Positions 20,863 to 64,000 of a stretch of 64,000 nucleotides of DNA are shown here, piece after piece. The translations under genes and the position numbers were made by a program. The notes under the pieces were generated by a model. That model did not search any database. It saw nothing but the letters and a program-made list of their open reading frames with translations, and was not told the origin of the DNA. Position 1 is the stretch's first letter; each line of letters begins with the position of its first letter. Source of the stretch: Diadema antillarum (lineage: Eukaryota); NCBI RefSeq assembly GCF_040938485.1, contig NW_027271737.1:930001-994000 (forward strand). The letters run 5' to 3'.

Positions 20863-23603
20863 CACATCATTCGTTCATAATGATGTGTTACAGTAAGTAC
20901 GTTGTAATCACAATGTACAATGAAACCTGTTCATAGCGGCCACCCGAGTGAGACGAAAAGTGTGCCCTCTATGACAGGTTCTTTCACGTGGCTTGTCTCT
21001 CGGAGGGAATTTCTTTAGTGGCCGTATACCTGCAGTTGACCGCTGTAGAAAGGTGGTCGCGAAGGCAGGTTTGACTGTATTCCTATCAAAATAAAAGATA
21101 GAGAGAGGAGGTTAACAGATAGAAACATATTTATATTCAGACTACAACAGGCATTTAGTTGTCTATAGGCAGACTATTATCGCCCATCCGGCTGTGACGG
21201 TTTAATGACTTCTACCTACTTTCCCGCACATGTCCTTGCCTGTTATTCTCGTTACCTTAACGAGTTAACCTTAACTACTCGCTTGTGGTGCTAATATTTG
21301 AATAATCTACAAACGATACTGCCTATTACGTAGGGGATACCAGAAGCAAGTCATCGCGAATTGTTTGCTATTTTCTCTGATGTCCTCTTTTGCTGGCTTC
21401 ACGTTTTGAATTCAATGCGTCTCTTCTGAAATTTAGAGAAGTTCTATGCTTTCCAACGATTCCCCTCTTTCTGTGATACCATCATCTACTCGTATTGTAA
21501 ACCAAGCAACGTGTAGTCATTGATTCTTATTGCAAACAATGCAATCACCGGGATATTATTGTACGTGTTAAACAATAATAATGATATTCATTATAAAGAT
21601 CATGAGGATAATGATGCCAATAAAAAAAAAAATATGATAACTGTTTTTTTTTTTTTACCTACGACTTTTGGCCATAAAGAATTAATGAAGATAATGGATA
21701 TGAAAGCAAAATTCAAGATGATGGGACCATTGATAAGTACTCCAAACCACAAAATGAAAAAAAAAAATTATGCGTCATAAGCGTTATATTAGATGGTTCC
21801 TGAATGGAGCATGATGAAGTCACTTGCATCAATCACATGGGGATAGTGTTTCAAATATCAAAAGTAGCATTAAGCTATGATACACTTCATGCTTTCTTAT
21901 GTTCAATGTGTAGGACGACGTTTCTTACCCGAGTGGCTGCTGTGACGAATGCAGTGAGTACCGTTCAAACCCCATCCTCCTCCTTCCCCTCTTCCTGTGG
22001 AGTGTGCAAAAGCAGTAATTGTCAATTGTAATCAGAAAGCAGAGTACATCAAGTAAATATATTGTACACACGATGAGAGAGATGTGACATCAAATAAAGC
22101 TGAAGTTGATTGTGTCATGTTTTAGCCTTTACCCCGGGCTAATCAAACTTTGGCTAAATATTCAAGGAACAGTAACAACAGCAATTGATAATGCTGAAGC
22201 GTAACGTATATCTAAGTAAGGAAGTGTTGTATATTTCAGACAAGGGCTCCGTCACCCAATTGTGGTTGCTATTAGGAGAAATTACACTGTATATCACGGG
22301 CAAGATTATTTCAAGGACATAGAGAATGCCCAGTACGTCGGTGCATCAACTCTTTGTTTCGTTAAAGCTTTGTGCATATCTGTCAGATCTGCTTGTTTCG
22401 AAACTGTGAATGAAGGCGACATCGACATCGGGTTCTTTTTTTTTGTTGTTGTTGTTATGATTTTTTTTTTTTTAATCCGACAGAAACCCAGGAAACTACA
22501 ACCGTAAGCACGACCACTGGTGTAGCAACAACACAGAGTAGCGAAGGTAAGACTATATTATCACGATTATATTTGATTAGCACCTTTTAGACGACACATA
22601 CCGTCATGATAGCTAAGTAAATGAAAGGTAAAGATAAGTTGTGAACAGTATCCGCAAGATTCAAAAGTCAAGCAAAAGTACAGAATATGAAAATGTAGCC
22701 ATAAGCGTGTCGCTTTCATATTGTGCAACTTCAGATCTGTGATGCTACTGCTACGACGCGCCTATTAGACCATGAGATGCCTTAGACAGCTGTTGTCAAA
22801 AGAATTGTAAAGGGGAATTCCCATGCAGTTAAAAGTTAGTTTTGAATACTTTACAAGTTTCTTAGTAGGACAATTAATATTTGATTAAATTCGGATAAAA
22901 AAGTAAGAAAGCTATGTCAGTTTCGCTGACAAATACATTTTGTTCAATATCACTCTCTGTGTAAGTCGTTTCCTCGCTACAAATGGTGTTGGGTTTTTTT
23001 TTCAAGTGTGTAGCCGTAATTCGAGTATGAATTTCCCTTTGCCATTGAGACTTTTCTACTTAACTAATTGTTCTAACCGACAAGATAACGAGTCATTTTA
23101 ATCTCAGACCGAGAGGATACCAAATTTGTCAAGTCTTCGGATGCACTACATTGAATTCGACAGCGATTGTTCATGTTCATGTTTTTATAAGAACTGAGAG
23201 CGAAACGCACAACAAGCTTATGCTTTCGGTACATTTCTTTCATGTACCGTTTTGTGTGTCTTTCTTTTTATCACATACAATAGAGGCTATGCTTTCTAGA
23301 AAATAGAATAGGAAGAAATAGTTTATTATCATTCAAGAAAAGATGGAGTCAATGAATAAGGACACTTTTCTACCTCTGCCATGTGGAGATGACTTTCTAA
23401 CCGATTTATAAATGTGTGTATATCTCTTCATATTATCCACATATTACAGAAAAAACAACATCGGGACTGCCAGGTAAATTTCATAGCTTTCATTTTCTTG
23501 TTCTTGCCCTAAGACTTCATATCCTTCTTAATGTGTCGTAATATGAAAAGAATCGCTGCTTTACCACTAATAAGGATCGTTCGCCAGAACTTTTTTTTCT
23601 CTC

Positions 23604-23634: not shown

Positions 23635-26600
23635 ACCTGTGCATTGTGGTTGCTTATACCCCGTTTACAGTGCGGGGCTGGACCGAGTCGGGCCGGGCGA
23701 GCACGGCCTCAATTATCACGGTACTCGGCCGCGCAATTCTGTTTGATTTACAGTGGAGGGCTCAGCCCGGGCTTTTAATAAAACTTTTAATATTTGTCAT
23801 AGTGGCGCTCTGCTTGTACACAAACGATTATTTGGTACCGCATTATGCCCAGTTTCCTTTTACAGAGAGAAAAGGCCAGACTGCTTCCAGACCTTGGCCA
23901 AATGCGCGGCCATATGTTGAACCGCATTTGGCCATTTTTAAGGGTTTCCAGCGAAAGGAAGGCCAGGCTGAGCCCGATCTTTTCACTCACTGTAAACGGG
24001 GCCTAGGTTAATATGCTGGAGAGGCGTGTTACTTACTGCACATTATCTCATTGATAATTAAACAGAATTCACCACGACCAAGACACGAACAGAAGCAACA
24101 ACCAGACCGGGAACCGAAAGAGCAACAACTGTCATTGAACAAACTACTGCAACTCCTGAATCAACAACTACAACTCAGACAACTGTTACATCAACCACTA
24201 GTGCAAGGCAGGAATCTACAACGCCAGGTACTTTTTTACTTGCGTTTTTCTAGGACTCCTGTCCCCAGATTCGAAACCGGAAGGATTTCATTTATTACTA
24301 GAGGACAGTTGGACAATTTTTCGCGTTAACGTAACCTGATCTTCCTCTACATTCTGCCTAAATGTATTCAGGAAGCAAGTCAGTTTCCTACACTGAACAA
24401 ATGACTGAATACAAATGGTACTATCTCTGAATAAGTTGCACGTGTCATGTTTGCTGAACAAATGTACGCTTCATACTCGTCGTCATCGAGGTTATACCTA
24501 TCTACATTCAACTTTCCAACTTTACCAGGTGCTTGTAGGGAACCACTGGATGGTGTGGATCTTTATACTAATTTGCAAGTTTTACTGGATAACGAACGTG
24601 TTACTGTTCACGCTAATAGCGAATCACCTAAAAAGACAGATTTTGACAATCACAATAGGTGATACGCTGATACCGTATCACCTATAGCGTACACATTCTG
24701 CAACGTGCGTTTCTCACCTTGGATTTCCGATTCATTTTTGTTTCATTAATCAGCAACGGGCATGGAAACAACAGTAGTTACAACCGTTGTAACTACAACA
24801 GTACCTACCACCACGTCGAAACCCACAACAGTCACTGAAGCTACCACCACAGCTGTTACCACAACAACTCCGATGGGTACTACTAGGATGGAGGAGACCA
24901 CAACTCTTTCTACTACTACTACTCCTGCTCAGACTACAGCAATGGGTAAAGCCTTGTTCTTTTTTTTTTCTCTCTCTCTCTGGCAAATGAACTTTCTTTA
25001 TAAATTAATATCGTAAGTTAACACTTCCCTTCTATCCCAATTTAAGGCATGGAATTTAGTTGAGAATAATGTTCTAAATTGACTACTGGTGGCACTTTAA
25101 GACTTAGGAGATTGTCATCGCTACAATACAATACATTGTTATGTATCCCCAAAACAACATTTGCACCAACAATTCTAAAGTGGTAGTAGTGGAGACAACT
25201 GCTACTCAGTCGACCATCACATATACCACTTGAGCAACTGAGCAACCAACAACAGCACCAGGTAATTTCCATTCCATTCTAATATGATTCATGTCCCATT
25301 AAACATCAACGGTAGTGGAACGCTATGGTATGGCCAAAATATTTTACCCAATAACTGAGACGAACGATTGACCATTCTTTTCAGAATGCTACGAGCCACA
25401 AGAGCCATTGCAAGAAGTCACTACCTTGACATACGAAGCCAGTTTCAGTCAGCCTACTACTATCAGAGGAATAAAACTACCTGCCAGCAGCTTCCCTACA
25501 ATGACTACAGTAGTATTCAGGATCAAACGCGCCGAAGGAGATGAATGGATTATTGTTCCTGCACAGAGCACAGAATCAGGATCTGGTGACTTCTCCGGTT
25601 CAGGATCGGGAGAGTCAGAGAATCAGGTAAATCCTAAATAGACAAGTATTCCCTTGTTCTACACAAAACATACATTACCACTTCTTGTATTAATACGTTA
25701 TAAATGAAATGGGCGGTATTTCGCCTGTATCTTCTATTAACCCTTTATGTGCTTTGAGTGTTGATTTCCACGTACAACACTAAAGCATTGTTTACGATAT
25801 CCAACAACAGTGGATGATGATAGAGAAAGGCTTCACAATATCATCTATCTTCAATCTTCAGTGTACCAGTCCTACATGTAAAATTTCTACAGTTCATCTA
25901 CTCTGATTCCTCATACTAATACTTTTTATCTTTCTTAGAAAAGCATAATTATGTGACCCCTTTATTGTAGTCGTATTTCAAACATATTTGATTTTCCAGA
26001 TTGACATTTGCATTTTCTGAAAGTTGTTTGGTCCAGATATCAAATAGAAAAGTTGTACTAATGCACTGATTAATTTCGTTGTATTCTTCATAGGGAGAAG
26101 TGACGTTTTCTTTGAGTGACTCTGCTCCAACTAACCTCTGGCTTCCATCCGAATTGGGGCCTGTGCGAGCTATCGAAGCAAGCTTTGGAGATGCACTTAA
26201 TCTGGGAAATGAAATCGATGTCTACGGCTGTCAGGGTAGGTGCACTTAAACCGACTTATTCACAAACAGCACTCTTGTGTGGAAAAGTTCTTTTCAGTTC
26301 AAACCGAAAAATCTCGTTCACGAATAGAATTCAATCAGTTCTATCTAACGTGTCTGTCGTGATCCCCTTAGATGTTCTTATTACGCAGAAAAGGTATATG
26401 CTAAGATTTATTTCTAATCATTTGATTCTTTCTCCATTTATAGATTATAAGACACATTGTATTCCCTCCGTGCTCTATGAACTGTATAATCAGTGAACTT
26501 ACAGCATTATAAGTTGTTAGCTATTCCAATATCAATTCCCTTAAAACTGAGAGCATTTTCAGTTGTTAGCTATGGCCAGATCAATTTCATTAAAAAGGTT

Positions 26601-29600
26601 CCTATGGATTTATTTTCCCCTTTGTTTGTATATTACCGCAGGACCCACTCTGGCTCCAACCACGAGAGGTACCTCTCCCCCAGGTAATACATTCCATTTT
26701 TATAAAAATATTAGGTTTCCTCGGTTTGGTCAAATACCTTGAAACATTAAATAAGTAAAAAAAAAAAAATATCTCTTTTAAAGCTCAAGACCACAGCGAA
26801 GCGCCAAACGCTGCAATCTCATTTTTTCCTCCCTCAACATCTAAAGCGATGACACTGTTTTTTTTTTTTTAAATACACTTGAAATCATCATTTTAGTCAA
26901 GAAAAGAAGGAAAATTGTCTTTTAAGATATATTTCATACTTCAACTCTGTCTAATACGACTGTATTCGATCCAAAAGTAGAATGTTCTCATTTGTTTCTT
27001 TCTCTCAACATTTACAGAAACGACAACTCTGGGTCAGTCAGGTAGGTCTAAGTCTCCATTGTATTTCTAACCTTTTTGAATTAACATGTAGTAAAAAAAG
27101 AAAATCAGATATCACTAAATGATAATTGCTTTAAGATCAAACTGGTTTCGACTATTCTTCGCTATAAGTCTTCTCTTTAAAAACAAAAGTCTCTCAACTG
27201 TCAAAAACACTGAGTGAAAGATACATGTGTGTCGTTTTCTCCTTTTTTACAGAAGTTACAACAACAAGGACGCGAACGCGAGCGACGACTACTGCTCCAG
27301 GAACCGAGCAAACAACAGCAGTAGTAGAGGAAACTACTGCCACTCCTGAAGCAACAACTACAACTCAGACAACTGTTACATCGACCACAACAGCACGACA
27401 GGAATCTACAACGCCAGGTAACTTCTCACTTCCATTTTTCCAAGACTCGTGTCCGAAGACGTAAAACCTGAATTATGTCATGTAAAACTAGAAGGCGGTC
27501 ACTCAACTCTTTCGTGTTAGCGTAACCTCTTCCTTCATCTTCATTCTGCTTGATGGTATCCAGCAACCAAGTTTGCTTAACTAAACGAATGACTAAAATG
27601 CATATGTTAATATCTCTTTCAATGACTTTAACGTGTTACTGTTCACTTAACAATATTGTACCCTACAAATTCGTCGTCACGCCCGTCTACATCCAAGACA
27701 TTTCTTTTACTTACCAGCTGCTTGCAGAAAACCACTGGATGGCGTGGATCTTGATACTAAATTGGAAGTTTTACTTGACAACAATAAAACCAACCTTTGG
27801 AGCGAACCTACTTCAGAGAGGACAGTGAAGGTCACTGTCAAATCAGTCGATGACACCTCAGACCTGACGATTAAGATATCAGCTGTCAGCATAAGCACAA
27901 CCAATGGTTCACCTCCCGATAGCGTTACAATTGGTGTCCTCTCGTCCAGCGATGGACCTGTTGAACGCGAATTTACAGCTCAACCCGGAGACGATCAGAC
28001 TCAAGGAATGTACGAGCTTCGAAACTTGACTGGTTTGAATGAAGTTTATTTCGAAATCACTCTTCCTGACGACTACAACGTGGCAGATTCGGAATTGACG
28101 GTGACATTCAGAGGATGTATTGAAACAGGTAATTTCATTTCTTTATGCGCTGAAGAAGTCCTCATTCATCTCTTTTGTTCTTGTATATGATCTATACATT
28201 TCTCCCACTAAATTTAACCACTACCTGCTGATATTGCAACAGCATATCAACTTTGGAATTTTGTGTGATCACAAAAAGATGATTGGCAGGTTATTGATTT
28301 GGTAAATTTATGTCTATACATTTTTCACCCATTACTCCTGCACTTTAATTCTTTTTTCTAATTAATCAGTCCTCATCCATCTCTTTTGATCGTGTAATGA
28401 TCCATTCATATATAACCGGTAACTGCTGATATTCCAACAACACATCAACTTCAGAATTTTAAGTAATCACAAAGAAAAAAAAAAGATAATTGGCATGTTA
28501 TTGCTTTGGTAGGTTTATGTCCATATATTTCTTGCTGATTATTCTGGTACTTTATGACAGTGCACTCAACTTATCAGCAACAATTTCACACTACACTACA
28601 CTACGATTCATTATTGTTTCATTAATCAGCAACGGGCATGGAAACAACAGTAGTTACAACCGTTGTAACTACAACTGTACCTACCACCACGTCGAAACCC
28701 ACAACAGTCACTGAAGCTACCACCACAGCTGTTACCACAACAACTCCGATGGGTACTACTAGGATGGAGGAGACCACAACTCTTTCTACTACTACTACTC
28801 CTGCTCAGACTACAGCAATGGGTAAAGCCTTGTTCTTTTCTCTCTCTCCCTCTCTCTCTCTCTCTGGCAAATGAACTTTCTTTATAAATTAATATCGTAA
28901 GTTAACACTTCCCTTCTATCCCAATTTAAGGCATGGAATTTAGTTGAGAATAATGTTCTAAATTGACTACTGGTGGCATTTTAAGACTTGGGAGATTGTC
29001 ATCGCTACAATACAATACATTGTTATGTATTCCAAAACAACATTTGCACCAACAACTAAAGTGGTAGTAGTGGAGACAACTGCTACTCAGTCGACCATCA
29101 CATATACCACTTGAGCAACTGAGCAACCAACAACAGCACCAGGTAATTTCCATTCCATTCTAATACCATTCATGTCCCATTAGTATAATCATCAACGGTA
29201 GTGGAACGCTATGGTATGGCCAAAATATTTTACCCAATAACTGAGACGAACGATTGACCATTCTTTTCAGAATGCTACGAGCCACAAGAGCCATTGCAAG
29301 AAGTCACTGCCTTGACATACGAAGCCAGCTTCAGTCAGCCTACTACTATCAGAGGAATCAAACTACCTGCCAGCAGCTTCCCTACAATGACTACAGTAGT
29401 ATTCAGGATCAAACGCGCCGAAGGAGATGAATGGATTATTGTTCCTGCACAGAGCACAGAATCAGGATCTGGTGACTTCTCCGGTTCAGGATCGGGAGAG
29501 TCAGAGAGTCAGGTAAATCCTAAATAGACAAGTATTCCCTTGTTCTACACAGAACATACATTACCACTTCTTGTATTAATACGTTATAAAAGGAAAATGG

Positions 29601-32663: not shown

Positions 32664-32698
<35 letters not shown>

Positions 32699-56524: not shown

Positions 56525-56555
<31 letters not shown>

Positions 56556-59500
56556 GGCAAATGAACTTTCTTTATAAATTAATATCGTAAGTTAACACTT
56601 CCCTTCTATCCCAATTTAAGGCATGGAATTTAGTTGAGAATAATGTTCTAAATTGACTACTGGTGGCATTTTAAGACTTAGGAGATTGTCATCGCTACAA
56701 TACAATACATTGTTATGTATTCCAAAACAACATTTGCACCAACAACTAAAGTGGTAGTAGTGGAGACAACTGCTACTCAGTCGACCATCACATATACCAC
56801 TTGAGCAACTGAGCAACCAACAACAGCACCAGGTAATTTCCATTCCATTCTAATACGATTCATGTCCCATTAGTATAAACATCAACGGTAGTGGAACGCT
56901 ATGGTATGGCCAAAATATTTTACCAAATAACTGAGACGAACGATTGACCATTCTTTTCAGAATGCTACGAGCCACAAGAGCCATTGCAAGAAGTCACTGC
57001 CTTGACATACGAAGCCAGCTTCAGTCAGCCTACTACTATCAGAGGAATCAAACTACCTGCCAGCAGCTTCCCTACAATGACTACAGTAGTATTCAGGATC
57101 AGGCGCGCCGAAGGAGATGAATGGATTATCGTTCCTGCACAGAGCACAGAATCAGGATCTGGTGACTTCTCCGGTTCAGGATCGGGAGAGTCAGAGAGTC
57201 AGGTAAATCCTAAATAGACAAGTATTCCCTTGTTCTACACAGAACATACATTACCACTTCTTGTATTAATACGTTATAAAAGGAAAATGGGCGGTATTTC
57301 GCCTGTATCTTCTATTAACCCTTTATGTGCTTTGAGTGTTGATTTGCACGTACAACCCTAAAGCACTGTATCGATATCCAACGACCATAAATGATAGAGA
57401 AATGCTTAACAATATCCTTTATCTTCAGTGTACCAGTCCTAGCTGTCAAATCTCTACTTATCATCTTCTCTGATTCCTCGTACTAAAACTTGTTATCTTT
57501 CTTGGAAAAACATTATTATGTCACCCCTTTATTGCAGTCGTATTTCAAACATATTTGATTTTCCGGATTTGCATTTGCATTTTTGAACATTGTTTGGTCC
57601 AGACATCAAATAGGAAAGTTGTACTAATGCATTGATTAATTTCTTTGTATTCTTCATAGGGCGAAGTGACGTTTTCTTTGAGTGACTCTGCTCCAACGAA
57701 CCTCTGGCTTCCATCCGAATTGGGGCCTGTGCGAGCTATCGAAGCAACCTTTGGAGAAGCACTTAATCTAGGAAATGAAATCGAGGTCTACGGCTGTCAG
57801 GGTAGGTGCACTTTAAGCGACTTATTCAAAAACAACACTCTTATGTGGACAAGTTCTTGTGAGTTCAAACGGAAAATTCTCGTTCACGATTAAAATTCAA
57901 ACAGTTCTATCTAACGTGTCTCTCGTAATCCTTAAAAGTTCTAGTTACGCAGAAAAGGAATATACTATGATTTATTTCTAATCATTTGATTCTTTATCCA
58001 TGTATAGATTATAAGACACATTGCATTCACTCCGTGCGCTATGAGCGGTATAATCAGTGAACTTACAGCATTTTAAGTTGTTAGTTATGGCCAGATCAAT
58101 TTCATTAAAAAGGTTCCTATGGATTTATTTTCCCCTTTGTTTGTATATTACCGCAGGACCCACTCCGGCTCCAACCACGAGAGGTACCTCTCCCCCAGGT
58201 AATACATTACATTTTTATAGAAATATTAGGTTTTCTCGGTTTGGTCAAATACCATGAAACATTGAATAAGTATAAAAAATAATAATATTTCTTTTAAAGC
58301 TCAATACCACAGCGAAGCGCCAACGCTGCAATCTCATTTTTTTCCTCAACATCTAAAGCGATGTCACTGTTTTTTTTTTCAAAATACACTTGAAATCATC
58401 ATCTAAGTCAAGGAAAGAAGGAAAATTGTCTTTGAAGATATAATTATTTCATATTTCACCTCCGTCTAATACGACTGTATTCGATCCAGAAGGAGAATGT
58501 TCTCATTTGTTTCTTTCTCTCAACATTTACAGAAACGACAACTCTGGGTCAGTCAGGTAGGTCTACGTCTTCATTGTATTTCTAACCTTTTTGAATTAAC
58601 ATGTACCAAAAAAAGAAAATCAGATATCACTAAATGATAATTGCTTTAAGATCAAACTGGTTTCGACTATTCTTCGCCATAAGTCTTCTCTTTAAAAACA
58701 AATGTATCTCAACTGTCAAAAACACTGAGTGAAAGATACATGTGTGTCGTTTTCTCCTTTTTCACAGAAGTGACAACAAGGACGCGAACGCGAGCGACAA
58801 CGACTACTGCTCCAGGAACCGAGCAAACAACAGCAGTAGTAGAGGAAACTACTGCCACTCCTGAAGCAACAACTACAACTCAGACAACTGTTACATCGAC
58901 CACAACAGCACGACAGGAATCTACAACGCCAGGTAACTTCTCACTTCCATTTTTCCAAGACTCGTGTCCGAAGACGTAAAACCTGAATTATGTCATGTAA
59001 AACTAGAAGGCGGTCACTCAACTCTTTCGTGTTAGCGTAACCTCTTCCTTCATCTTCATTCTGCTTGATGGTATCCAGCAACCAAGTTTGCTTAACTAAA
59101 CGAATGACTAAAATGCATACGTTAATATCTCTTTCAATGACTTTAACGTGTTACTGTTCACTTAACAATATTGTACCCTACAAATTCGTCGTCACGCCCG
59201 TCTACATCCAAGACATTTCTTTTATTTACCAGCTGCTTGCAGAAAACCACTGGATGGCGTGGATCTCGATACTAAATTGGAAGTTTTACTTGACAACAAT
59301 AAAACCAACCTTTGGAGCGAACCTACTTCAGAGAGGACAGTGAAGGTCACTGTCAAATCAGTCGATGACACCTCAGACCTGACGATTAAGATATCAGCTG
59401 TCAGCATAAGCACAACCAATGGTTCACCTCCCGATAGCGTTACAATTGGTGTCCTCTCGTCCAGCGATGGACCTGTTGAACGCGAATTTACAGCTCAACC

Positions 59501-60348
59501 CGGAGACGATCAGACTCAAGGAATGTACGAGCTTCGAAACTTGACTGGTTTGAATGAAGTTTATTTCGAAATCACTCTTCCTGACGACTACAACGTGGCA
59601 GATTCGGAATTGACGGTGACATTCAGAGGATGTATTGAAACAGGTAATTTCATTTCTTTATGCGCTGAAGAAGTCCTCATTCATCTCTTTTGTTCTTGTA
59701 TATGATCTATACATTTCTCCCACTAAATTTAACCACTACCTGCTGATATTGCAACAGCATATCAACTTTGGAATTTTGTGTGATCACAAAAAGATGATTG
59801 GCAGGTTATTGATTTGGTAAATTTATGTCTATACATTTTTCACCCATTACTCCTGCACTTTAATTCTTTTTTCTAATTAATCAGTCCTCATCCATCTCTT
59901 TTGATCGTGTAATGATCCATTCATATATAACCGGTAACTGCTGATATTCCAACAACACATCAACTTCAGAATTTTAAGTAATCACAAAGAAAAAAAAAGA
60001 TAATTGGCATGTTATTGCTTTGGTAGGTTTATGTCCATATATTTCTTGCTGATTATTCTGGTACTTTATAACAGTGCACTCAACTTATCAGCAACAATTT
60101 CACACTACACTACACTACGATTCATTATTGTTTCATTAATCAGCAACGGGCATGGAAACAACAGTAGTTACAACCGTTGTAACTACAACTGTACCTACCA
60201 CCACGTCGAAACCCACAACAGTCACTGAAGCTACCACCACAGCTGTTACCACAACAACTCCGATGGGTACTACTAGGATGGAGGAGACCACAACTCTTTC
60301 TACTACTACTACTCCTGCTCAGACTACAACAATGGGTAAAGCCTTGTT

Positions 60349-60379
<31 letters not shown>

Positions 60380-63300
60380 GGCAAATGAACTTTCTTTATA
60401 AATTAATATCGTAAGTTAACACTTCCCTTCTATCCCAATTTAAGGCATGGAATTTAGTTGAGAATAATGTTCTAAATTGACTACTGGTGGCATTTTAAGA
60501 CTTAGGAGATTGTCATCGCTACAATACAATACATTGTTATGTATTCCAAAACAACATTTGCACCAACAACTAAAGTGGTAGTAGTGGAGACAACTGCTAC
60601 TCAGTCGACCATCACATATACCACTTGAGCAACTGAGCAACCAACAACAGCACCAGGTAATTTCCATTCCATTCTAATACGATTCATGTCCCATTAGTAT
60701 AAACATCAACGGTAGTGGAACGCTATGGTATGGCCAAAATATTTTACCAAATAACTGAGACGAACGATTGACCATTCTTTTCAGAATGCTACGAGCCACA
60801 AGAGCCATTGCAAGAAGTCACTGCCTTGACATACGAAGCCAGCTTCAGTCAGCCTACTACTATCAGAGGAATCAAACTACCTGCCAGCAGCTTCCCTACA
60901 ATGACTACAGTAGTATTCAGGATCAAACGCGCCGAAGGAGATGAATGGATTATTGTTCCTGCACAGAGCACAGAATCAGGATCTGGTGACTTCTCCGGTT
61001 CAGGATCGGGAGAGTCAGAGAGTCAGGTAAATCCTAAATAGACAAGTATTCCCTTGTTCTACACAGAACATACATTACCACTTCTTGTATTAATACGTTA
61101 TAAAAGGAAAATGGGCGGTATTTCGCCTGTATCTTCTATTAACCCTTTATGTGCTTTGAGTGTTGATTTGCACGTACAACCCTAAAGCACTGTATCGATA
61201 TCCAACGACCATAAATGATAGAGAAATGCTTAACAATATCCTTTATCTTCAGTGTACCAGTCCTAGCTGTCAAATCTCTACTTATCATCTTCTCTGATTC
61301 ATAGTACTAAAACTTGTTATCTTTCTTGGAAAAACATTATTATGTCACCCCTTTATTGCAGTCGTATTTCAAACATATTTGATTTTCCGGATTTGCATTT
61401 GCATTTTCTGAACATTGTTTGGTCCAGACATCAAATTGGAAAGTTGTACTAATGCATTGATTAATTTCTTTGTATTCTTCATAGGGCGAAGTGACGTTTT
61501 CTTTGAGTGACTCTGCTCCAACGAACCTCTGGCTTCCATCCGAATTGGGGCCTGTGCGAGCTATCGAAGCAATCTTTGGAGAAGCACTTAATCTAGGAAA
61601 TGAAATCGAGGTCTACGGCTGTCAGGGTAGGTGCACTTTAAGCGACTTATTCAAAAACAACACTCTTATGTGGACAAGTTCTTGTGAGTTCAAACGGAAA
61701 ATTCTCGTTCACGATTAAAATTCAAACAGTTCTATCTAACGTGTCTCTCGTAATCCTTAAAAGTTCTAGTTACGCAGAAAAGGAATATACTATGATTTAT
61801 TTCTAATCATTTGATTCTTTATCCATGTATAGATTATAAGACACATTGCATTCACTCCGTGCGCTATGAGCGGTATAATAAGTGAACTTACAGCATTTTA
61901 AGTTGTTAGTTATGGCCAGATCAATTTCATTAAAAAGGTTCCTATGGATTTATTTTCCCCTTTGTTTGTATATTACCGCAGGACCCACTCCGGCTCCAAC
62001 CACGAGAGGTACCTCTCCCCCAGGTAATACATTGTATTTTTATAGAAATATTAGGTTTTCTCGGTTTGGTCAAATACCATGAAACATTGAATAAGTAAAA
62101 AAAATAATAATATTTCTTTTAAAGCTCAATACCACAGCGAAGCGCCAAACGCTGCAATCTCATTTTTTTCCTCAACATCTAAAGCGATGACACTGTTTTT
62201 TTTTTTTCAAAATACACTTGAAATCATCATCTAAGTCAAGGAAAGAAGGAAAATTGTCTTTGAAGATATAATTATTTCATATTTCACCTCTGTCTAATAC
62301 GACTGTATTCGATCCAGAAGGAGAATGTTCTCATTTGTTTCTTTCTCTCAACATTTACAGAAACGACAACTCTGGGTCAGTCAGGTAGGTCTACCTCTCC
62401 ATTGTATTTCTAACCTTTTTCAATTAACATGTACCAAAAAAAGAAAATCAGATATCACTAAATGATAATTGCTTTAAGATCAAACTGGTTTCAACTATTC
62501 TTCGCCATAAGTCTTCTCTTTAAAAACAAATGTCTCTCAACTGTCAAAAACACTGAGTGAAAGATACATGTGTGTCGTTTTCTCCTTTTTCACAGAAGTG
62601 ACAACAAGGACGCGAACGCGAGCGACAACGACTACTGCTCCAGGAACCGAGCAAACAACAGCAGTAGTAGAGGAAACTACTGCCACTCCTGAAGCAACAA
62701 CTACAACTCAGACATCTGTTACATCGACCACAACAGCACGACAGGAATCTACAACGCCAGGTAACTTCTCACTTCCATTTTTCCAAGACTCGTGTCCGAA
62801 GACGTAAAACCTGAATTATGTCATGTAAAACTAGAAGGCGGTCACTCAACTCTTTCGTGTTAGCGTAACCTCTTCCTTCATCTTCATTCTGCTTGATGGT
62901 ATCCAGCAACCAAGTTTGCCTAACTAAACGAATGACTAAAATGCATATGTTAATATCTCTTTCAATGACTTTAACGTGTTACTGTTCACTTAACAATATT
63001 GTACCCTACAAATTCGTCGTCACGCCCGTCTACATCCAAGACATTTCTTTTATTTACCAGCTGCTTGCAGAAAACCACTGGATGGCGTGGATCTTGATAC
63101 TAAATTGGAAGTTTTACTTGACAACAATAAAACCAACCTTTGGAGCGAACCTACTTCAGAGAGGACAGTGAAGGTCACTGTCAAATCAGTCGATGACACC
63201 TCAGACCTGACGATTAAGATATCAGCTGTCAGCATAAGCACAACCAATGGTTCACCTCCCGATAGCGTTACAATTGGTGTCCTCTCGTCCAGCGATGGAC

Positions 63301-64000
63301 CTGTTGAACGCGAATTTACAGCTCAACCCGGAGACGATCAGACTCAAGGAATGTACGAGCTTCGAAACTTGACTGGTTTGAATGAAGTTTATTTCGAAAT
63401 CACTCTTCCTGACGACTACAACGTGGCAGATTCGGAATTGACGGTGACATTCAGAGGATGTATTGAAACAGGTAATTTCATTTCTTTATGCGCTGAAGAA
63501 GTCCTCATTCATCTCTTTTGTTCTTGTATTATGATCTATACATTTCTCCCACTAAATTTAACCACTACCTGCTGATATTGCAACAGCATATCAACTTTGG
63601 AATTTTGTGTGATCACAAAAAGATGATTGGCAGGTTATTGATTTGGTAAATTTATGTTTATACATTTTTCACCCATTACTCCTGCACTTTAATTCTTTTT
63701 TCTAATTAATCAGTCCTCATCCATCTCTTTTGATCGTGTAATGATCCATTCATATATAACCGGTAACTGCTGATATTCCAACAACACATCAACTTCAGAA
63801 TTTTAAGTAATCACAAAGAAAAAAAAAAAGATAATTGGCATGTTATTGCTTTGGTAGGTTTATGTCCATATATTTCTTGCTGATTATTCTGGTACTTTAT
63901 AACAGTGCACTCAACTTATCAGCAACAATTTCACACTACACTACACTACGATTCATTTTTGTTTCATTAATCAGCAACGGGCATGGAAACAACAGTAGTT
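1..64000 (+). CDS. Partial giant multi-exon gene: mucin/SCO-spondin-like secreted protein (TIL, VWC, F5/8C and discoidin-like domains, PTS repeats); both ends lie outside the window
   Basis: Continuous chain of GT-AG exons with matching phases from 1 to 64000. Summed in-frame exon length is about 17.2 kb (~5,750 aa), excluding the TGA cassette and the broken exon at 24529. Confidence 0.88.
968..1063 (+). CDS. Exon: VWC module 1, middle
   Basis: ttctag|ctc...agt|gtaagt; LGETWKDSCYDCICEPDREVQCTPVCDLTCGS; phase 0-0. Confidence 0.88.
1785..1836 (+). CDS. Exon: VWC module 1, end
   Basis: ccacag|ggc...cat|gtaagt; GEELIYPDTNECCYCAP; phase 0-1. Confidence 0.82.
2435..2476 (+). CDS. 42-nt Pro/Thr linker exon
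   Basis: tttacag|ct...cta|gtaagt; (S)PTTALPTPPPPPP; phase 1-1. Confidence 0.78.
2661..2826. mobile_element. MITE, PIF/Harbinger-like, long palindromic arms
   Basis: TIR gggcccgttgca / tgcaacgggccc; 3-bp TSD CAG (2658-2660, 2827-2829); internal arms of ~60 bp are inverted copies. Confidence 0.82.
3071..3291 (+). CDS. Exon: TIL-like domain plus start of a VWC/TILa-like module
   Basis: poly-C tract cccag|cg...gag|gtaagc; CDITEEATSCETTSGCRTHVCHYIKQQSLCIPKSLSEDSPCCECKKGETLHNGTRCVPIMECPCLDASGERRE; phase 1-0. Confidence 0.87.
3909..4020 (+). CDS. Exon: truncated VWC/TILa-like module
   Basis: ttcacag|gcc...cgg|gtattg; AHERWSNPLKECETCRCSSNSIVCYPTANCTTSTTTP; phase 0-1. Confidence 0.86.
4616..4660 (+). 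CDS. 45-nt PTS exon
   Basis: ttctcacag|tc...cag|gtatgt; VITTAAPTTTPLLPP; phase 1-1. Confidence 0.8.
5062..5366 (+). CDS. Exon: F5/8 type C (discoidin) domain, N-terminal part
   Basis: EDCYSVLGLE...ARLNNAFAAWVP...WLQVDFSVPTRVTGIDTQG...WVSRFHLEY (typical FA58C motifs); tgcag|aa...atg|gtacgt; phase 1-0. Confidence 0.9.
6088..6232 (+). CDS. Exon: F5/8 type C domain, C-terminal part
   Basis: LFKANSDGDSIVSNV...AIRILP...WIALRIELRGCQ; cttcag|ctc...aag|gtgact; phase 0-1. Confidence 0.9.
6309..6485. mobile_element. MITE, PIF/Harbinger-like, related to the 2661 element
   Basis: TIR ggccccgttgc / gcaacggggcc; TSD CTG (6306-6308, 6486-6488); shares the internal gattttgattgg motif with 2661-2826. Confidence 0.8.
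7260..7286 (+). CDS. 27-nt micro-exon
   Basis: Long pyrimidine tract cacctgcag|aa...ctg|gtgaga; EIISVPTTT; phase 1-1. Confidence 0.72.
7832..7906 (+). CDS. 75-nt PTS exon
   Basis: GPPSTPQVTTRPATTPPATEATTFQ; donor aag|gtaaag; weak A-rich acceptor gaaaaag; phase 1-1. Confidence 0.75.
8389..8442 (+). CDS. 54-nt PTS exon
   Basis: ctttccag|aa...gag|gtaaga; ETTEPARTTTTISSTTTR; phase 1-1. Confidence 0.8.
8946..9377 (+). CDS. Single-exon degenerate discoidin-like domain #1
   Basis: 432 nt, phase 1-1; GVCEEPMFELG...VTVRRVLIG...LSLTADFLGCEKE; flanking Cys and x-x-G-C end as in FA58C. Confidence 0.85.
10181..10339 (+). CDS. 159-nt PTS exon
   Basis: gtgtatag|ta...aag|gtgagt; VTTVETTTVTRTS...SSTTSIE; phase 1-1. 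Confidence 0.85.
10971..11396 (+). CDS. Single-exon degenerate discoidin-like domain #2
   Basis: 426 nt, phase 1-1; GECRDDMDDLN...FNVNAGFLGCIP; atttgcag / gtaata. Confidence 0.85.
11820..12677 (+). CDS. Large mucin PTS exon (286 codons)
   Basis: ataacag|ag...aag|gtaagg; open Thr/Ser/Pro-rich frame matching ORF 11942-12697; phase 1-1. Confidence 0.86.
12128..12223 (+). repeat. 4 x 24-nt coding repeat (TSKLPEVT-like)
   Basis: acctccaaacttccagaggtcacg and three variants. Confidence 0.8.
13122..13256. other. Assembly gap (135 N) in an intron
   Basis: Run of N. Confidence 0.99.
13631..14056 (+). CDS. Single-exon degenerate discoidin-like domain #3
   Basis: 426 nt, phase 1-1; GQCEDPMTSLG...VIVRRVVI...LSLNAEFFGCIEE; clearly alignable to 8946-9377. 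Confidence 0.85.
14758..14916 (+). CDS. 159-nt PTS exon, paralogous to 10181-10339
   Basis: catcag|ta...cag|gttgat; VTVVETTTAVRTP...TVP; same length and phase. Confidence 0.83.
15437..15508 (+). CDS. 72-nt PTS exon
   Basis: gatgttag|ct...cgg|gtaaat; ATTTAAPSSEIYTERTTIVTTPIT. Confidence 0.78.
15901..15929 (+). CDS. 29-nt micro-exon: VWC module 2, start
   Basis: ttcctag|aa...cag|gtacgt; ECEIDGTVLQ; phase 1-0. Confidence 0.8.
16321..16425 (+). CDS. Exon: VWC module 2, middle
   Basis: catgcag|acg...aag|gtaagt; TNESLQDPNDNCTVFRCLDNGLFSRTDYVCEMPCK; phase 0-0. Confidence 0.82.
16800..16833 (+). CDS. 34-nt micro-exon: VWC module 2, end
   Basis: tctcatcag|acg...gtt|gtaagc; TTYPPGCCDGC; phase 0-1. 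Confidence 0.8.
17693..18233. mobile_element. Non-autonomous DNA transposon (TTAA target, AG...CT ends; Kolobok-like)
   Basis: Long imperfect inverted arms (aggacaagtca...gaacacatcagtgaaagtttgg...gatgagaagactact vs agtagtcttctcatc...caaactttcactgatgtgttc...tgacttatcct). Right flank is TTAA (18234-18237); left flank is TGAA. Confidence 0.75.
18382..18418. repeat. (TG)n microsatellite
   Basis: Direct reading. Confidence 0.95.
18420..19460 (+). mobile_element. Degenerate 3' end of an L1/Tx1-like LINE (ORF2 C-terminal Zn knuckle plus 3' UTR)
   Basis: Interrupted frames read KYREFQYK (18585-18608) and CSFC..EEETYPHIFLFCKQVQRTWQEM (CCHC-type motif after RT); later TIILIIK*IIYF; A-rich end near 19440-19465. 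Boundaries approximate. Confidence 0.65.
19557..19586 (+). CDS. 30-nt linker micro-exon
   Basis: ttttatcag|ct...atg|gtgagt; STTVKGPSID; phase 1-1. Confidence 0.75.
20250..20278 (+). CDS. 29-nt micro-exon: VWC module 3, start
   Basis: ttctttcag|gg...cag|gtaagc; GCTYGGVTYQ; phase 1-0; same length as 15901-15929. Confidence 0.82.
20678..20794 (+). CDS. Exon: VWC module 3, middle
   Basis: gcgtcag|gtt...gat|gtgagt; VGSTIYNIRKQVPCYVVICGKSGRPEWVPEVYNCSEQCD; phase 0-0. Confidence 0.82.
20918..21077. mobile_element. Tc1/mariner-superfamily (pogo/Tigger-like) MITE remnant
   Basis: TA flanks (20916-17, 21078-79); imperfect TIR caatgaaacctg...gcggccacc vs reverse complement cagtcaaacctg...gcgaccacc. 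Confidence 0.6.
21914..21953 (+). CDS. 40-nt micro-exon: VWC module 3, end
   Basis: tgtgtag|gac...gca|gtgagt; DDVSYPSGCCDEC, homologous to TTYPPGCCDGC; phase 0-1. Confidence 0.82.
22484..22546 (+). CDS. 63-nt PTS exon
   Basis: atccgacag|aa...aag|gtaaga; KTQETTTVSTTTGVATTQSSE. Confidence 0.8.
23450..23473 (+). CDS. 24-nt micro-exon; diverged homolog of array exon H
   Basis: atattacag|aa...cag|gtaaat; EKTTSGLP (array copy: ETTTLGQS). Confidence 0.72.
23659..24001. mobile_element. MITE with 14-bp TIR (Harbinger-like termini)
   Basis: ccccgtttacagtg (23659-72) / cactgtaaacgggg (23988-24001); GC-rich interior; TSD not clean. Confidence 0.62.
24066..24227 (+). CDS. 162-nt PTS exon; diverged copy of array exon A
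   Basis: EFTTTKTRTEATTRPGTE...ARQESTTP; aacag / gtactt; phase 1-1. Confidence 0.8.
24529..24658 (+). pseudogene. Truncated pseudo-exon of discoidin-like exon B
   Basis: GACREPLDGVDLYTNLQVLLDN aligns to AACRKPLDGVDLDTKLEVLLDN, then homology stops. TGA at 24660; the only nearby donor (24659) is phase 2 and out of frame. Confidence 0.75.
24754..24945 (+). CDS. Array exon C (192-nt PTS), U0 copy
   Basis: aatcag|ca...tgg|gtaaag; ATGMETTVVTT...AQTTAM. Confidence 0.87.
25181..25261 (+). other. Array exon D: 81-nt PTS-coding cassette with an in-frame TGA (U0 copy)
   Basis: ctaaag|tg...cag|gtaatt; VVVETTATQSTITYTT*ATEQPTTAP; TGA at 25231-25233. Confidence 0.7.
25385..25626 (+). CDS. Array exon E: N-half of split discoidin-like domain with Ser-Gly insert (U0)
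   Basis: ECYEPQEPLQE...EASFSQPTTIRGIKLP...ESGSGDFSGSGSGESENQ; phase 1-0. Confidence 0.86.
26094..26235 (+). CDS. Array exon F: C-half of split discoidin-like domain (U0)
   Basis: GEVTFSL...NEIDVYGCQ; catag / gtaggt; phase 0-1. Confidence 0.86.
26642..26683 (+). CDS. Array exon G (42 nt), U0
   Basis: accgcag|ga...cag|gtaata; GPTLAPTTRGTSPP. Confidence 0.8.
27018..27041 (+). CDS. Array exon H (24-nt micro-exon), U0
   Basis: tttacag|aa...cag|gtaggt; ETTTLGQS. Confidence 0.75.
27253..27417 (+). CDS. Array exon A (165-nt PTS), U0
   Basis: tttacag|aa...cag|gtaact; EVTTTRTRTRA...RQESTTP. Confidence 0.87.
27718..28128 (+). CDS. Array exon B: single-exon degenerate discoidin-like domain (137 codons), copy 1
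   Basis: ttaccag|ct...cag|gtaatt; AACRKPLDGVDL...ELTVTFRGCIET; phase 1-1. Confidence 0.88.
27718..31547 (+). repeat. Long unit L1 (3830 bp)
   Basis: B 27718-28128, C 28630-28821, D(TGA) 29062-29142, E 29271-29512, F 29971-30112, G 30468-30509, H 30848-30871, A 31083-31247. Confidence 0.95.
31548..35377 (+). repeat. Long unit L2 (3830 bp)
   Basis: B 31548-31958, C 32459-32650, D 32893-32973, E 33102-33343, F 33802-33943, G 34299-34340, H 34678-34701, A 34913-35077. Confidence 0.95.
35378..39205 (+). repeat. Long unit L3 (3828 bp)
   Basis: B 35378-35788, C 36289-36480, D 36723-36803, E 36932-37173, F 37632-37773, G 38129-38170, H 38509-38532, A 38744-38908. Confidence 0.95.
39206..42913 (+). 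repeat. Long unit L4 with a 123-nt in-frame deletion in exon E (3708 bp)
   Basis: B 39206-39616, C 40117-40308, D 40551-40631, E(del) 40760-40878, F 41337-41478, G 41834-41875, H 42214-42237, A 42449-42613. Confidence 0.95.
42914..46713 (+). repeat. Long unit L5, mosaic of long- and short-type sequence (3800 bp)
   Basis: B 42914-43324, C(189 nt) 43827-44015, D 44241-44321, E 44441-44682, F 45126-45267, G 45623-45664, H 46014-46037, A 46249-46413. Confidence 0.93.
46714..48885 (+). repeat. Short unit S1 (2172 bp)
   Basis: B 46714-47124, C' 47625-47813, H 48171-48194, A' 48421-48585; no D/E/F/G. Confidence 0.95.
48886..51059 (+). repeat. Short unit S2 (2174 bp)
   Basis: B 48886-49296, C' 49797-49985, H 50343-50366, A' 50595-50759. 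Confidence 0.95.
51060..53234 (+). repeat. Short unit S3 (2175 bp)
   Basis: B 51060-51470, C' 51971-52159, H 52518-52541, A' 52770-52934. Confidence 0.95.
53235..55408 (+). repeat. Short unit S4 (2174 bp)
   Basis: B 53235-53645, C' 54146-54334, H 54692-54715, A' 54944-55108. Confidence 0.95.
55409..59232 (+). repeat. Long unit L6 (3824 bp)
   Basis: B 55409-55819, C 56320-56511, D 56752-56832, E 56961-57202, F 57660-57801, G 58157-58198, H 58533-58556, A 58768-58932. Confidence 0.95.
59233..63060 (+). repeat. Long unit L7 (3828 bp)
   Basis: B 59233-59643, C 60144-60335, D 60576-60656, E 60785-61026, F 61485-61626, G 61982-62023, H 62361-62384, A 62596-62760. Confidence 0.95.
63061..64000 (+). 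repeat. Partial 12th unit (array continues past the window)
   Basis: B 63061-63471; exon C begins at 63975. Confidence 0.93.

What the first reader, a model, noticed from the sequence alone, without database searches (positions are those of the whole stretch)
23450..64000. Intragenic tandem array of whole exon-intron cassettes with two unit types
Seen: 12 copies of exon B at spacings 3830, 3830, 3828, 3708, 3800, 2172, 2174, 2175, 2174, 3824 and 3828 bp, with introns nearly identical between copies. The long unit has 8 exons (406 aa without exon D); the short unit has 4 exons (263 aa). All units begin and end in phase 1. Established: vertebrate mucin VNTRs usually sit inside one large exon. 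Here the repeat unit is a multi-exon module mixing folded domains and PTS. Inference: ongoing unequal crossing-over tunes protein length and domain mix, so haplotypes likely differ in L/S order and count.
Basis: partly seen in the sequence, partly recalled or inferred. Interest (0 to 1): 0.85.

Follow-up and report, generated by a model that had tools for sequence, protein, structure and literature searches.

The report
Mucin gene of repeated exon cassettes
A sea-urchin gene for a giant mucin-like (sugar-coated) protein holds at least twelve near-identical head-to-tail copies of a whole block of exons and introns, in a long and a short version; the array is real in the sequence, but it is a new example of a known way for such genes to grow, not a new mechanism.

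Summary
The long unit encodes 406 aa and the short unit 263 aa. Every copy keeps AG/GT splice sites and an open frame, and unit boundaries are in phase 1.

The array lies in a large + strand gene with TIL-like exons, a Pfam-significant F5/8 type C domain, diverged discoidin-like exons and Thr-rich spacers. The repeated domain has no sequence family, but its model aligns best to discoidin domains.

Long- and short-type flanks differ by 5-25%. A 927-bp block (domain exon plus next intron) is identical in both types, and both type switches fall inside it. Diadema antillarum and D. setosum carry short-unit arrays. Marine-metagenome contigs from a closer relative carry both types. Copies are alike within a lineage and 17-28% diverged between lineages, which indicates concerted evolution.

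Not shown: transcription, true copy number and haplotype variation.

Precedents are DMBT1, LPA KIV-2, SmPoMuc and spider Flag silk, so this is a new member of a known kind. The scan had already noted this stretch (s1-208901, s1-208785, s1-208824) and cassette-built mucins on other DNA of this genome (s1-217780, s1-215040).

The parts
1..4010 (+). Upstream Cys-rich exons of the same gene (about 1-140, 968-1080, 3060-3290, 3880-4010). They are TIL/VWC-like. The gene starts outside the window.
   Evidence: Open frames with Cys patterns. The Pfam TIL match has E 2.7e-4 and 21.5 bits, below the 24.5-bit cut-off.
5062..6232 (+). Canonical F5/8 type C (discoidin) domain in two exons: 5062-5366 (phase 1-0) and 6088-6232 (phase 0-1).
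   Evidence: Pfam PF00754 at E 2.3e-8, 34.7 bits against a 28.2-bit cut-off.
8942..14076 (+). Three single-exon diverged discoidin-like domains (8942-9379, 10967-11413, 13630-14076), interleaved with PTS exons including the large one at 11804-12694. An N gap lies at 13122-13256.
   Evidence: The domains are 32-40% identical pairwise, E 1e-16 to 1e-28. No Pfam hit.
24062..26999 (+). Degenerate founder unit: diverged exon B' (24062-24230), a truncated remnant of exon C (about 24522-24589, frame then closes), then D0 24754-24945, E0 25181-25261, F0 25385-25626, G0 26094-26235 and H0 26642-26683. Places 26846-26882 lie in its last intron and were not sent to any search tool.
   Evidence: The same truncated-C edge occurs in the D. 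antillarum locus.
27018..30847 (+). Reference long (L) unit 1. Exons: A 27018-27041, B 27253-27417 (PTS), C 27718-28128 (discoidin-like domain), D 28630-28821 (PTS), E 29062-29142 (in-frame TGA; possible 27-nt mini-exon 29116-29142), F 29271-29512 and G 29971-30112 (second domain with an acidic Ser-Gly loop), H 30468-30509 (PTS).
30848..46013 (+). L units 2-5, starting at 30848, 34678, 38509 and 42214. Unit 4 has an in-frame 123-nt deletion in exon F (40760-40878). Unit 5 has a short-type D exon (43827-44015, 189 nt) and a short-type start of the next intron, followed by long-type E-H.
46014..54691 (+). Four short (S) units, exons A-B-C-D only, starting at 46014, 48171, 50343 and 52518. In the register that starts at exon C they differ by 0-2 mismatches, and two of them are identical.
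54692..64000 (+). L units 10 (54692) and 11 (58533), and unit 12 (62361), which the window end cuts inside exon D.
27686..28612 (+). Example of the 927-bp block (exon C plus most of the C-D intron). It has no L/S-diagnostic site in any of the 12 units. Both type switches (after the 5th and 9th copies) fall inside this block.
   Evidence: the block has 2 variable columns in 411 nt of exon C and 7 in the 501-nt intron, none of them separating L from S units. The A-B intron has 69 variable columns in 211 nt.

Best explanation
The region is the central part of one very large + strand gene for a secreted, heavily O-glycosylated, mucin-like 'beads-on-a-string' protein of a diadematid sea urchin. Upstream are Cys-rich TIL-like modules, a canonical discoidin domain, three diverged discoidin-like domains and Thr-rich spacers. 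The centre was then built by tandem duplication of a frame-neutral (phase 1-1) genomic cassette. The short cassette is linker A, PTS B, discoidin-like domain C and PTS D. The long cassette adds a second, two-exon discoidin-derived domain (F+G, with an acidic Ser-Gly loop), a short PTS exon H and a probably skipped or shortened exon E. Shown: the anatomy, frame compatibility, near identity of copies including introns, the mosaic pattern, and related arrays in other lineages. Inferred: the array is kept homogeneous and changes in length and L/S composition by unequal homologous recombination and gene conversion. Exchanges concentrate in the 927-bp block that is identical in all units. Each exchange adds or removes whole cassettes without breaking the frame. 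Inferred by analogy: the protein displays many copies of a fast-evolving discoidin-like binding domain on glycosylated stalks, for agglutination, mucus barrier or adhesion.
For: Periodicity and unit map. All 12 copies of A, B and C, 12 of D and 8 of F, G and H (9 with the founder unit) keep AG/GT, open frames and matching phases. No unit carries a start or signal-peptide exon, and exon A is a 24-nt internal linker. Gene context: Pfam F5_F8_type_C above cut-off plus TIL-like and PTS exons on the same strand. This matches the invertebrate hemolectin/mucin-like layout with F5_F8 domains and PTS (PMC4948705). Coding constraint across lineages: window versus Diadema exon C dN/dS is 0.41-0.43 (p 0.002 for <1) and exon B 0.17-0.20 (p 0.004). 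Exons B and C have no indels, while introns are 72-84% identical with many indels. Within the array, the one diverged long unit has 1 mismatch in 507 nt of exons E-H against 71 in 1519 nt of introns (Fisher 3e-8). Concerted evolution: exon C is identical in protein in all 12 window copies but 75-79% identical to the Diadema copies, which are themselves uniform within species. Mosaic and hybrid units. Independent assemblies of D. antillarum and D. setosum show tandem arrays of the short cassette (period about 2338 bp; at least 5 and 6 intact units), with the same truncated-C 5' edge in D. antillarum. Two metagenome contigs about 90-95% identical to the window carry an S-type and an L-type piece. 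Domain C fold: AlphaFold2 pLDDT 73, pTM 0.68, eight strands. The best structural alignments are neuropilin b1, factor VIII C2 and factor V C2, Z 8.0-8.6, 111-115 of 136 residues, end to end. Language-model neighbours are F5/8 type C clusters. F+G shares the two-exon phase pattern, the E-C-Y start and the G-C-Q-G end with the gene's canonical discoidin domain.
Against: No spliced, RNA-derived protein was found in the protein collections. Hits were ab initio models or unspliced metagenome ORFs. Copies are so recent that open frames within the array are weak evidence for selection on their own. The exon/intron contrast in unit 5 could also come from patchy gene conversion. All 9 copies of the 81-nt exon E carry an in-frame TGA. 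If that long form were spliced in, the protein would end in the founder unit. Two short units are 100% identical, a pattern that assemblers can miscount. Domain C has no sequence link to discoidin domains: no Pfam hit, hhalign probability 11% to the upstream domains, Foldseek TM below 0.5. VIA Z near 8 is at the edge of what unrelated beta-sandwiches reach. The flanks of the Diadema loci do not align to the window's flanks, so orthology versus paralogy is open.
Confidence: 0.75

Rival explanations
1. The array exists, but the assembly miscounts or misorders it. Collapse or expansion of near-identical units would make the 12 copies and the L5-S4-L3 order unreliable.
For: Short units differ by 0-2 mismatches and two are identical over 2174 bp. 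No read depth or spanning reads could be examined.
Against: Most units carry private variants: the 123-nt deletion in unit 4, the hybrid unit 5, and singletons in units 1, 4, 10 and 11. The short block is only 8.7 kb, flanked by distinguishable long units, within the reach of single long reads. Two other species' assemblies independently show arrays of the same cassette.
Confidence: 0.15
2. The region is a cluster of separate small genes, one or two cassettes each, as the public gene models for Diadema (548 and 558 aa 'uncharacterized proteins') imply.
For: NCBI-derived models P0001 and P0003 cut the Diadema arrays into separate proteins.
Against: Those models start at a Met inside the intron before exon B and end by reading into the intron after exon D. 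This is typical of ab initio splitting of a repeat. In the window no unit has a signal-peptide exon. All unit boundaries are internal AG/GT exons in matching phase 1. Only 211 nt separate exon A from exon B.
Confidence: 0.04
3. The array is largely untranslated or decaying. The stop in exon E ends the protein in the founder unit, or the locus is a young pseudogene, and the downstream units look intact only because they were copied recently.
For: The in-frame TGA is present in all 9 copies of the 81-nt exon E. Distal units of the D. antillarum array are visibly decayed, with frameshifts and stops. There is no expression evidence.
Against: The long-form acceptor of E sits in an A-rich context, and its in-frame AG is not kept in the relative L004. 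Skipping E, or using the 27-nt mini-exon, keeps the frame. Exons B, C and D show dN/dS below 1 and no frame-breaking indels across about 25% neutral divergence. Exons F, G and H are unchanged in the unit whose introns diverged 4-8%.
Confidence: 0.08

Closest known systems
DMBT1 / salivary agglutinin (gp340), human
   Same: An intragenic tandem array in which a folded binding domain (SRCR) on its own exon alternates with Ser/Thr/Pro-rich spacer exons. It has two repeat-unit sizes in one gene: CNV1, a 4-SRCR unit, and CNV2, a single-SRCR unit with 0-11 copies per diploid genome. Copy number changes by recombination at up to 0.7-2.7% per generation, and the protein is a secreted mucin-like agglutinin (PMC4851238).
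   Different: The domain is SRCR, not discoidin-like. DMBT1 is a vertebrate gene with CUB and ZP domains and no VWD/TIL context. Copy-number polymorphism is demonstrated there and untested here.
SmPoMuc polymorphic mucins of Schistosoma mansoni (also spider Flag silk and Coccidioides SOWgp)
   Same: The mucin repeat is encoded by tandem genomic units of exon plus flanking introns (about 1 kb, up to about 20 units). [quoted passage not shown]
   Different: The unit there is a single 27-bp exon with no folded domain. Here the unit has 4 or 8 exons with one or two folded domains.
LPA kringle IV-2 and nebulin/titin super-repeats
   Same: Multi-exon, frame-neutral cassettes repeated in tandem inside one gene with near-identical introns. 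Copy number varies between haplotypes by unequal recombination.
   Different: These are not mucins, have no PTS spacers, and use kringle or nebulin/Ig modules.
Invertebrate hemolectin-type / gel-forming-mucin-related proteins with F5_F8_type_C domains
   Same: VWD-C8-TIL units are followed by F5/8 type C domains with PTS nearby (PMC4948705). The window shows TIL-like exons, a canonical F5/8 type C domain and PTS in that order.
   Different: No VWD or C8 domain lies within the window, so membership is unproven. A long array of orphan discoidin-like domains is not described in that paper.
Vertebrate MUC2/MUC5AC/MUC5B central regions
   Same: Small folded domains interrupt the PTS, and MUC5B has higher-order 'super-repeats'.
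   Different: In vertebrates the whole region lies in one giant exon, and the repeats are VNTRs without introns.
Sea-urchin Nectin (six tandem discoidin domains) and VWD/FA58C adhesive proteins of temporary adhesion
   Same: Secreted echinoderm proteins with tandem FA58C domains, used for adhesion or cohesion (PMC10057474).
   Different: Nectin domains are recognisable FA58C domains, 47-55% identical to each other, with no PTS spacers. No sequence relation to domain C was found.

Membership tests
Intragenic exon-intron cassette array under concerted evolution (DMBT1, LPA KIV-2, SmPoMuc, Flag silk type) | Head-to-tail genomic repeats, each containing whole exons with their introns | tested here: met
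   12 or more units of 3.7-3.83 kb or 2.17 kb, each with 8 or 4 exons flanked by AG/GT.
Intragenic exon-intron cassette array under concerted evolution (DMBT1, LPA KIV-2, SmPoMuc, Flag silk type) | Units are frame-neutral, so gain or loss of units keeps the reading frame | tested here: met
   all exons are phase 1-1 except the F/G pair (1-0, 0-1). Units are 1218 nt and 789 nt of coding sequence, both multiples of 3.
Intragenic exon-intron cassette array under concerted evolution (DMBT1, LPA KIV-2, SmPoMuc, Flag silk type) | Copies are more alike within a genome than between related genomes, introns included | tested here: met
   (within the array: 0-30 mismatches per unit). (against the Diadema loci: introns 72-84%, exon C 83% nt and 75-79% aa). 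Orthology versus paralogy of the Diadema loci is unresolved.
Intragenic exon-intron cassette array under concerted evolution (DMBT1, LPA KIV-2, SmPoMuc, Flag silk type) | All units are transcribed and spliced into one mRNA | not testable with these tools
Protein collections hold only ab initio models or unspliced ORFs.
Intragenic exon-intron cassette array under concerted evolution (DMBT1, LPA KIV-2, SmPoMuc, Flag silk type) | Copy number or unit order is polymorphic between haplotypes | not tested
   No reads or second haplotype were available. The only comparison is between lineages: S-only arrays in two Diadema species, L+S here.
Mucin-like protein (PTS domain protein; gel-forming-mucin/hemolectin relative) | Long Pro/Thr/Ser-rich regions | tested here: met
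   Thr-rich exons B, D, H and A in every unit, and the 297-aa PTS frame at 11804-12694. Judged by composition, directly from the translations.
Mucin-like protein (PTS domain protein; gel-forming-mucin/hemolectin relative) | VWD-C8-TIL units, signal peptide and C-terminal CK or further VWD domains | tested here: inconclusive
   Only a sub-threshold TIL match (21.5 bits against 24.5) and Cys-rich exons at 1-4010. The gene's 5' and 3' ends lie outside the window.
F5/8 type C (discoidin) domain, PF00754, for the repeated domain C | Match to the family's sequence profile | tested here: not met
   No Pfam hit at E up to 1. hhalign probability to the gene's own diverged discoidin-like domains is 11%. 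No PDB sequence hit.
F5/8 type C (discoidin) domain, PF00754, for the repeated domain C | Eight-stranded beta-sandwich with the discoidin topology, termini tied by a Cys pair | tested here: inconclusive
   The AF2 model has pLDDT 73 and 8 strands. VIA Z is 8.0-8.6 to neuropilin b1, FVIII C2 and FV C2, end to end. Foldseek TM is at most 0.49. Cys lies at positions 2 and 133 of 136. The result favours a discoidin-like fold but is not decisive.
Vertebrate-type mucin VNTR (repeats inside one large exon) | Repeat units are contiguous coding sequence without introns | tested here: not met
   Each unit contains 3-7 introns with stops in all frames.

The most novel reading that the evidence does not exclude
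The array is a germline hypervariable locus of an innate-immune or adhesive agglutinin. In this reading the 927-bp invariant block acts as a recombination hotspot that reshuffles long and short cassettes between haplotypes at a high rate, as at DMBT1. Conversion then spreads new variants of a fast-evolving orphan discoidin-like binding domain through all copies at once. Individuals would differ in bead number, in the ratio of the two domain types, and possibly in Ser-Gly glycosaminoglycan sites. The 26 non-synonymous to 5 synonymous changes in domain C between two Diadema species, against a conserved PTS, would reflect ligand-driven selection.
Probability: 0.12. Interest if true: 0.65.

Novelty: new member of a known kind. 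Interest (0 to 1): 0.4.

Why it matters
The locus shows cleanly how an invertebrate mucin-like gene lengthens: by copying whole frame-neutral exon-intron cassettes that carry folded domains, not by a VNTR inside one exon. It also preserves the footprints of the process: two unit types, a shared homogenised block where the types switch, a hybrid unit, and decayed units in a sister lineage. Arrays like this are broken into several 'uncharacterized proteins' by automatic annotation (seen here for two Diadema genomes), so recognising them corrects gene models and protein-size estimates. The repeated domain is an orphan at sequence level and evolves faster than its PTS spacers, which is the reverse of the usual mucin pattern. 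That makes it a candidate ligand-binding module worth testing in Diadema, whose mass die-offs (my own knowledge, not checked here) make mucosal and surface defence proteins of practical interest. None of this changes the general picture already set by DMBT1, LPA, SmPoMuc and silk genes.

Tried and rejected
1. Tandem Repeats Finder returned nothing because its longest period is 500 bp. I replaced it with k-mer offsets and blastn.

There is therefore no depth, junction or spanning-read evidence. Local scripts still read the window file as a whole.

3. Pfam gave nothing on any cassette exon.

4. A full HMMER search of 1.84 billion representatives with domain C found only two clusters, both from relatives. 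The family cannot be placed by sequence.

5. The word-index searches with P0001, domain C and exon F returned only ab initio models and unspliced metagenome ORFs. I had hoped for RNA-derived spliced fragments and found none.

6. tblastn of the window's upstream exons and of exons E-H against the Diadema loci found nothing. The long cassette could not be shown in Diadema within 10 kb of the arrays, and the flanks could not establish orthology.

7. Profile-profile comparison of domain C with the upstream discoidin-like domains gave 11% probability.

8. I could not fold the F+G domain. It is spliced from two exons, so it has no reference, and I did not type it in.

9. I considered and rejected a transposon or satellite origin. 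There are no long ORFs on the minus strand beyond mirror images of the PTS, and the exons are conserved across lineages.

10. The direction of the L/S change (insertion of E-H or its deletion) could not be decided. The short D-A intron shares its first 47 nt with the Diadema D-A intron and about its first 85 nt with the hybrid long unit's D-E intron. It shares its last 153-206 nt with both the long unit and Diadema.
Full report
**Observation**

The periodicity is unmistakable. Successive occurrences of 20-mers are spaced 3830, 2174, 3828, 3831, 3824, 2175, 3705, 2172, 3800 and 3708 bp apart, thousands of times each. A single 3830-bp unit aligns head to tail from 24141 to the window end at 94-99% identity. 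Tandem Repeats Finder was blind to it only because its period limit is 500 bp.

I mapped eight candidate exons in the unit 27018-30847 and projected them onto all copies:
- A, 24 nt
- B, 165 nt, Thr-rich
- D, 192 or 189 nt, Thr-rich
- F, 242 nt, and G, 142 nt, which together form a second Cys-bounded domain
- H, 42 nt

The long unit codes for 406 residues without E and the short unit (A-B-C-D) for 263. Every copy has AG and GT at its ends and an open frame. All exons are phase 1-1 except F (1-0) and G (0-1). The order is five long units, four short units, two long units and a twelfth unit cut by the window end. A degenerate founder unit precedes them: a diverged B', a truncated C remnant, then D-H at about 93-99% identity. 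Within the window the array encodes roughly 4,300 residues.

**Gene context**

On the same strand upstream lie several features:
- Cys-rich TIL/VWC-like exons. The TIL match is below Pfam's cut-off.
- A canonical F5/8 type C domain split into two exons, 5062-5366 and 6088-6232 (Pfam E 2.3e-8, above the cut-off).
- Three single-exon domains that are 32-40% identical to each other and carry the same Cys...G-C frame.
- Thr-rich exons, including a 297-residue one.

This order (TIL, F5/8 type C, PTS) matches the hemolectin-type, gel-forming-mucin-related proteins described for invertebrates (PMC4948705). No VWD domain lies in the window, so I do not file the gene in that family. No unit contains a start or signal-peptide exon, and the 24-nt exon A makes sense only as an internal linker. 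The array is therefore intragenic.

**The repeated domains**

Domain C has no Pfam match. In a full HMMER pass over 1.84 billion representative proteins it hit only two clusters, both from relatives.

An AlphaFold2 model built on a shallow alignment has pLDDT 73 and pTM 0.68 with eight strands. Foldseek matches are weak (TM at most 0.49) but are dominated by CBM32, discoidin and galactose-binding-like folds. The second-look aligner ranks neuropilin b1, factor VIII C2, factor V C2, lactadherin C2 and CASPR2 discoidin domains first. These score Z 8.0-8.6 with 111-115 of 136 residues aligned end to end at about 3 A. Language-model neighbours are F5/8 type C clusters. Profile comparison with the gene's own upstream domains finds only the C-terminal F-x-G-C-I-E motif, at 11% probability. 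I read domain C as a strongly derived discoidin-like domain, with moderate confidence.

F+G could not be folded because it has no reference. It shares the two-exon 1-0/0-1 structure, the E-C-Y start, the G-C-Q-G end and a remnant of the discoidin V-x-G-I motif with the canonical domain. It also carries an acidic Ser-Gly run at the exon junction.

**Exon E**

All nine copies of the 81-nt form carry an in-frame TGA. In a metagenome contig from a close relative (L004) that codon is TCA, but the in-frame AG of the long form is not kept. The same base change sits at position -3 of an alternative acceptor. That acceptor would give a 27-nt, frame-keeping mini-exon at 29116-29142, with cAG in the relative and gAG here. 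Skipping E altogether also keeps the frame. Only RNA data can decide among the three.

**Footprints of recombination**

Aligning the A-to-D part of all units shows two haplotype classes. The sites that separate long-type from short-type flanks are dense in the A-B intron (69 variable columns in 211). They are moderate in B, the B-C intron and D (5-8%). They are absent from 27686-28612, which is exon C plus most of the C-D intron (927 bp). Both switches of unit type fall inside this block, which agrees with the scan's note s1-208901.

In the register that starts at exon C:
- The four short units differ by 0-2 mismatches, and two are identical.
- Long units differ by 4-30 mismatches.
- The fifth long unit differs from the others by 78-90.

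That fifth unit borders the short block. It has a short-type D exon and a short-type start of the next intron, followed by long-type E-H. Against another long unit it has 1 mismatch in 507 nt of exons E-H but 71 in 1519 nt of introns (Fisher 3e-8). Unit 4 has a 123-nt in-frame deletion in exon F without microhomology. Long units, but not short ones or the hybrid, have a (CT)8 microsatellite right after exon D.

**Other lineages**

The best protein hits are 'uncharacterized proteins' of Diadema antillarum and D. setosum. Their loci (L001, L003) hold tandem arrays of the short cassette with a period of about 2338 bp. There are at least 5 intact units in D. antillarum, followed by units decayed by frameshifts and stops, and at least 6 intact units in D. 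setosum. The public models cut the arrays into pieces that begin at a Met in the intron before B and end by reading into the intron after D. They are no evidence for separate genes.

Window versus Diadema:
- Introns are 72-84% identical with many indels.
- Exons B and C have no indels.
- dN/dS is 0.17-0.20 for B and 0.41-0.43 for C, both significantly below 1.
- Exon C is 75-79% identical in protein, yet uniform within each genome.

Between the two Diadema species exon C shows 26 non-synonymous and 5 synonymous differences. That gives dN/dS 1.6, not significantly above 1. Exon B shows 0 and 3. The folded domain therefore evolves faster than the spacer.

The short unit's D-A intron is homologous at both ends to the Diadema D-A intron. 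The long unit shares only its last 140 nt. The D. antillarum array begins with the same truncated-C remnant as the window's founder unit, but the flanks further out do not align. I cannot say whether these are orthologues in a different genus or species, or paralogues.

Two Tara metagenome contigs that are 90-95% identical to the window carry a short-type piece (L002) and a long-type piece with D, E and F (L004). Both unit types therefore predate that split.

**What could not be done**

I have no transcript junctions, depth or spanning reads. I worked beside those places afterwards. No letters of them went to any collection, pattern, paper or findings search, and the Rfam scan (no hits) covered 1-26800 only. 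Some runs of the same organism hold 14-25% of the sampled words, close to the exon fraction of the stretch. That is only a hint that they are RNA.

**Comparison with what is known**

The design has direct precedents.
- DMBT1 has SRCR-domain exons alternating with Ser/Thr/Pro-rich spacer exons. It has two repeat-unit sizes and a recombination-driven copy-number mutation rate of up to 0.7-2.7% per generation (PMC4851238).
- SmPoMuc mucins have tandem exon-plus-intron repeats with two repeat types in one gene. [quoted passage not shown] The same paper cites spider Flag silk and SOWgp (PMC2576457).
- LPA KIV-2 and nebulin are further examples from general knowledge.
- Other notes of this scan report cassette-built mucins elsewhere in this genome.

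The contrast with vertebrate mucin VNTRs in one exon is correct, but it does not make this a new kind of system.

**Verdict**

The finding is a new member of a known kind, and I score interest at 0.4. Its most interesting features are the shared invariant block where the unit types switch, the orphan fast-evolving discoidin-like domain, and the turnover of the array between diadematid lineages.

Noticed in passing
window 29440-29512 (and every copy of exon F): Exon F ends in an acidic Ser-Gly run (E-S-G-S-G-D-F-S-G-S-G-S-G-E-S-E-S-Q) just before the F/G splice junction. This resembles glycosaminoglycan attachment sites. The scan also noted it as s1-208785. The 123-nt deletion in unit 4 removes most of it.
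   Followed up: no
L001 20526-23208 (Diadema antillarum, GCA_040938485.1): The distal units of the D. antillarum array are decayed. Exon A is 25 nt, B has a frameshift and a stop, C is 436 nt with several stops, and D has stops. The five units before them are intact.
   Followed up: partly
L001 10001-13806 and L003 10001-14942: Public gene models (548 and 558 aa 'uncharacterized proteins') split the Diadema arrays into separate genes. They start at a Met inside an intron and end by reading into an intron with an A-rich tail. They are probably annotation artefacts of the repeat.
   Followed up: partly
exon C of L001 versus L003: Between D. antillarum and D. setosum the folded domain has 26 non-synonymous against 5 synonymous differences (dN/dS 1.6, not significant). 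The neighbouring PTS exon B has 0 against 3. This reverses the usual mucin pattern of conserved domains and fast-evolving PTS.
   Followed up: partly
window 8942-9379, 10967-11413, 13630-14076; L003 16622-17005: These single-exon Cys...G-C domains are 32-40% identical to each other in the window, and a 23%-identical one follows the D. setosum array. They have no Pfam match and are probably older diverged discoidin-like beads of the same gene family (scan note s1-208784).
   Followed up: partly
window 28850-28865 and the same place in other long units: A (CT)8 microsatellite lies directly after exon D in long units. It is absent from short units and from the hybrid fifth long unit, and it sits where long and short units stop aligning.
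   Followed up: no
L004 1-400 (Tara metagenome scaffold): In this relative's contig exon B is followed directly by C-D intron sequence and then by D, E and F, so exon C is missing. This recalls the window's founder unit with its truncated C. It could be the orthologous array edge or a metagenome mis-join.
   Followed up: partly
window 13122-13256: A run of 135 N lies in the intron before the third single-exon domain. It was left as it is.
   Followed up: no
window 15000-24000: This is a 9-kb stretch with only one short Thr-rich candidate exon (about 22440-22540), AT-rich simple sequence and a CCN-rich tract near 23600. It is presumably a large intron with repeats. No Rfam family was found in 1-26800.
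   Followed up: partly
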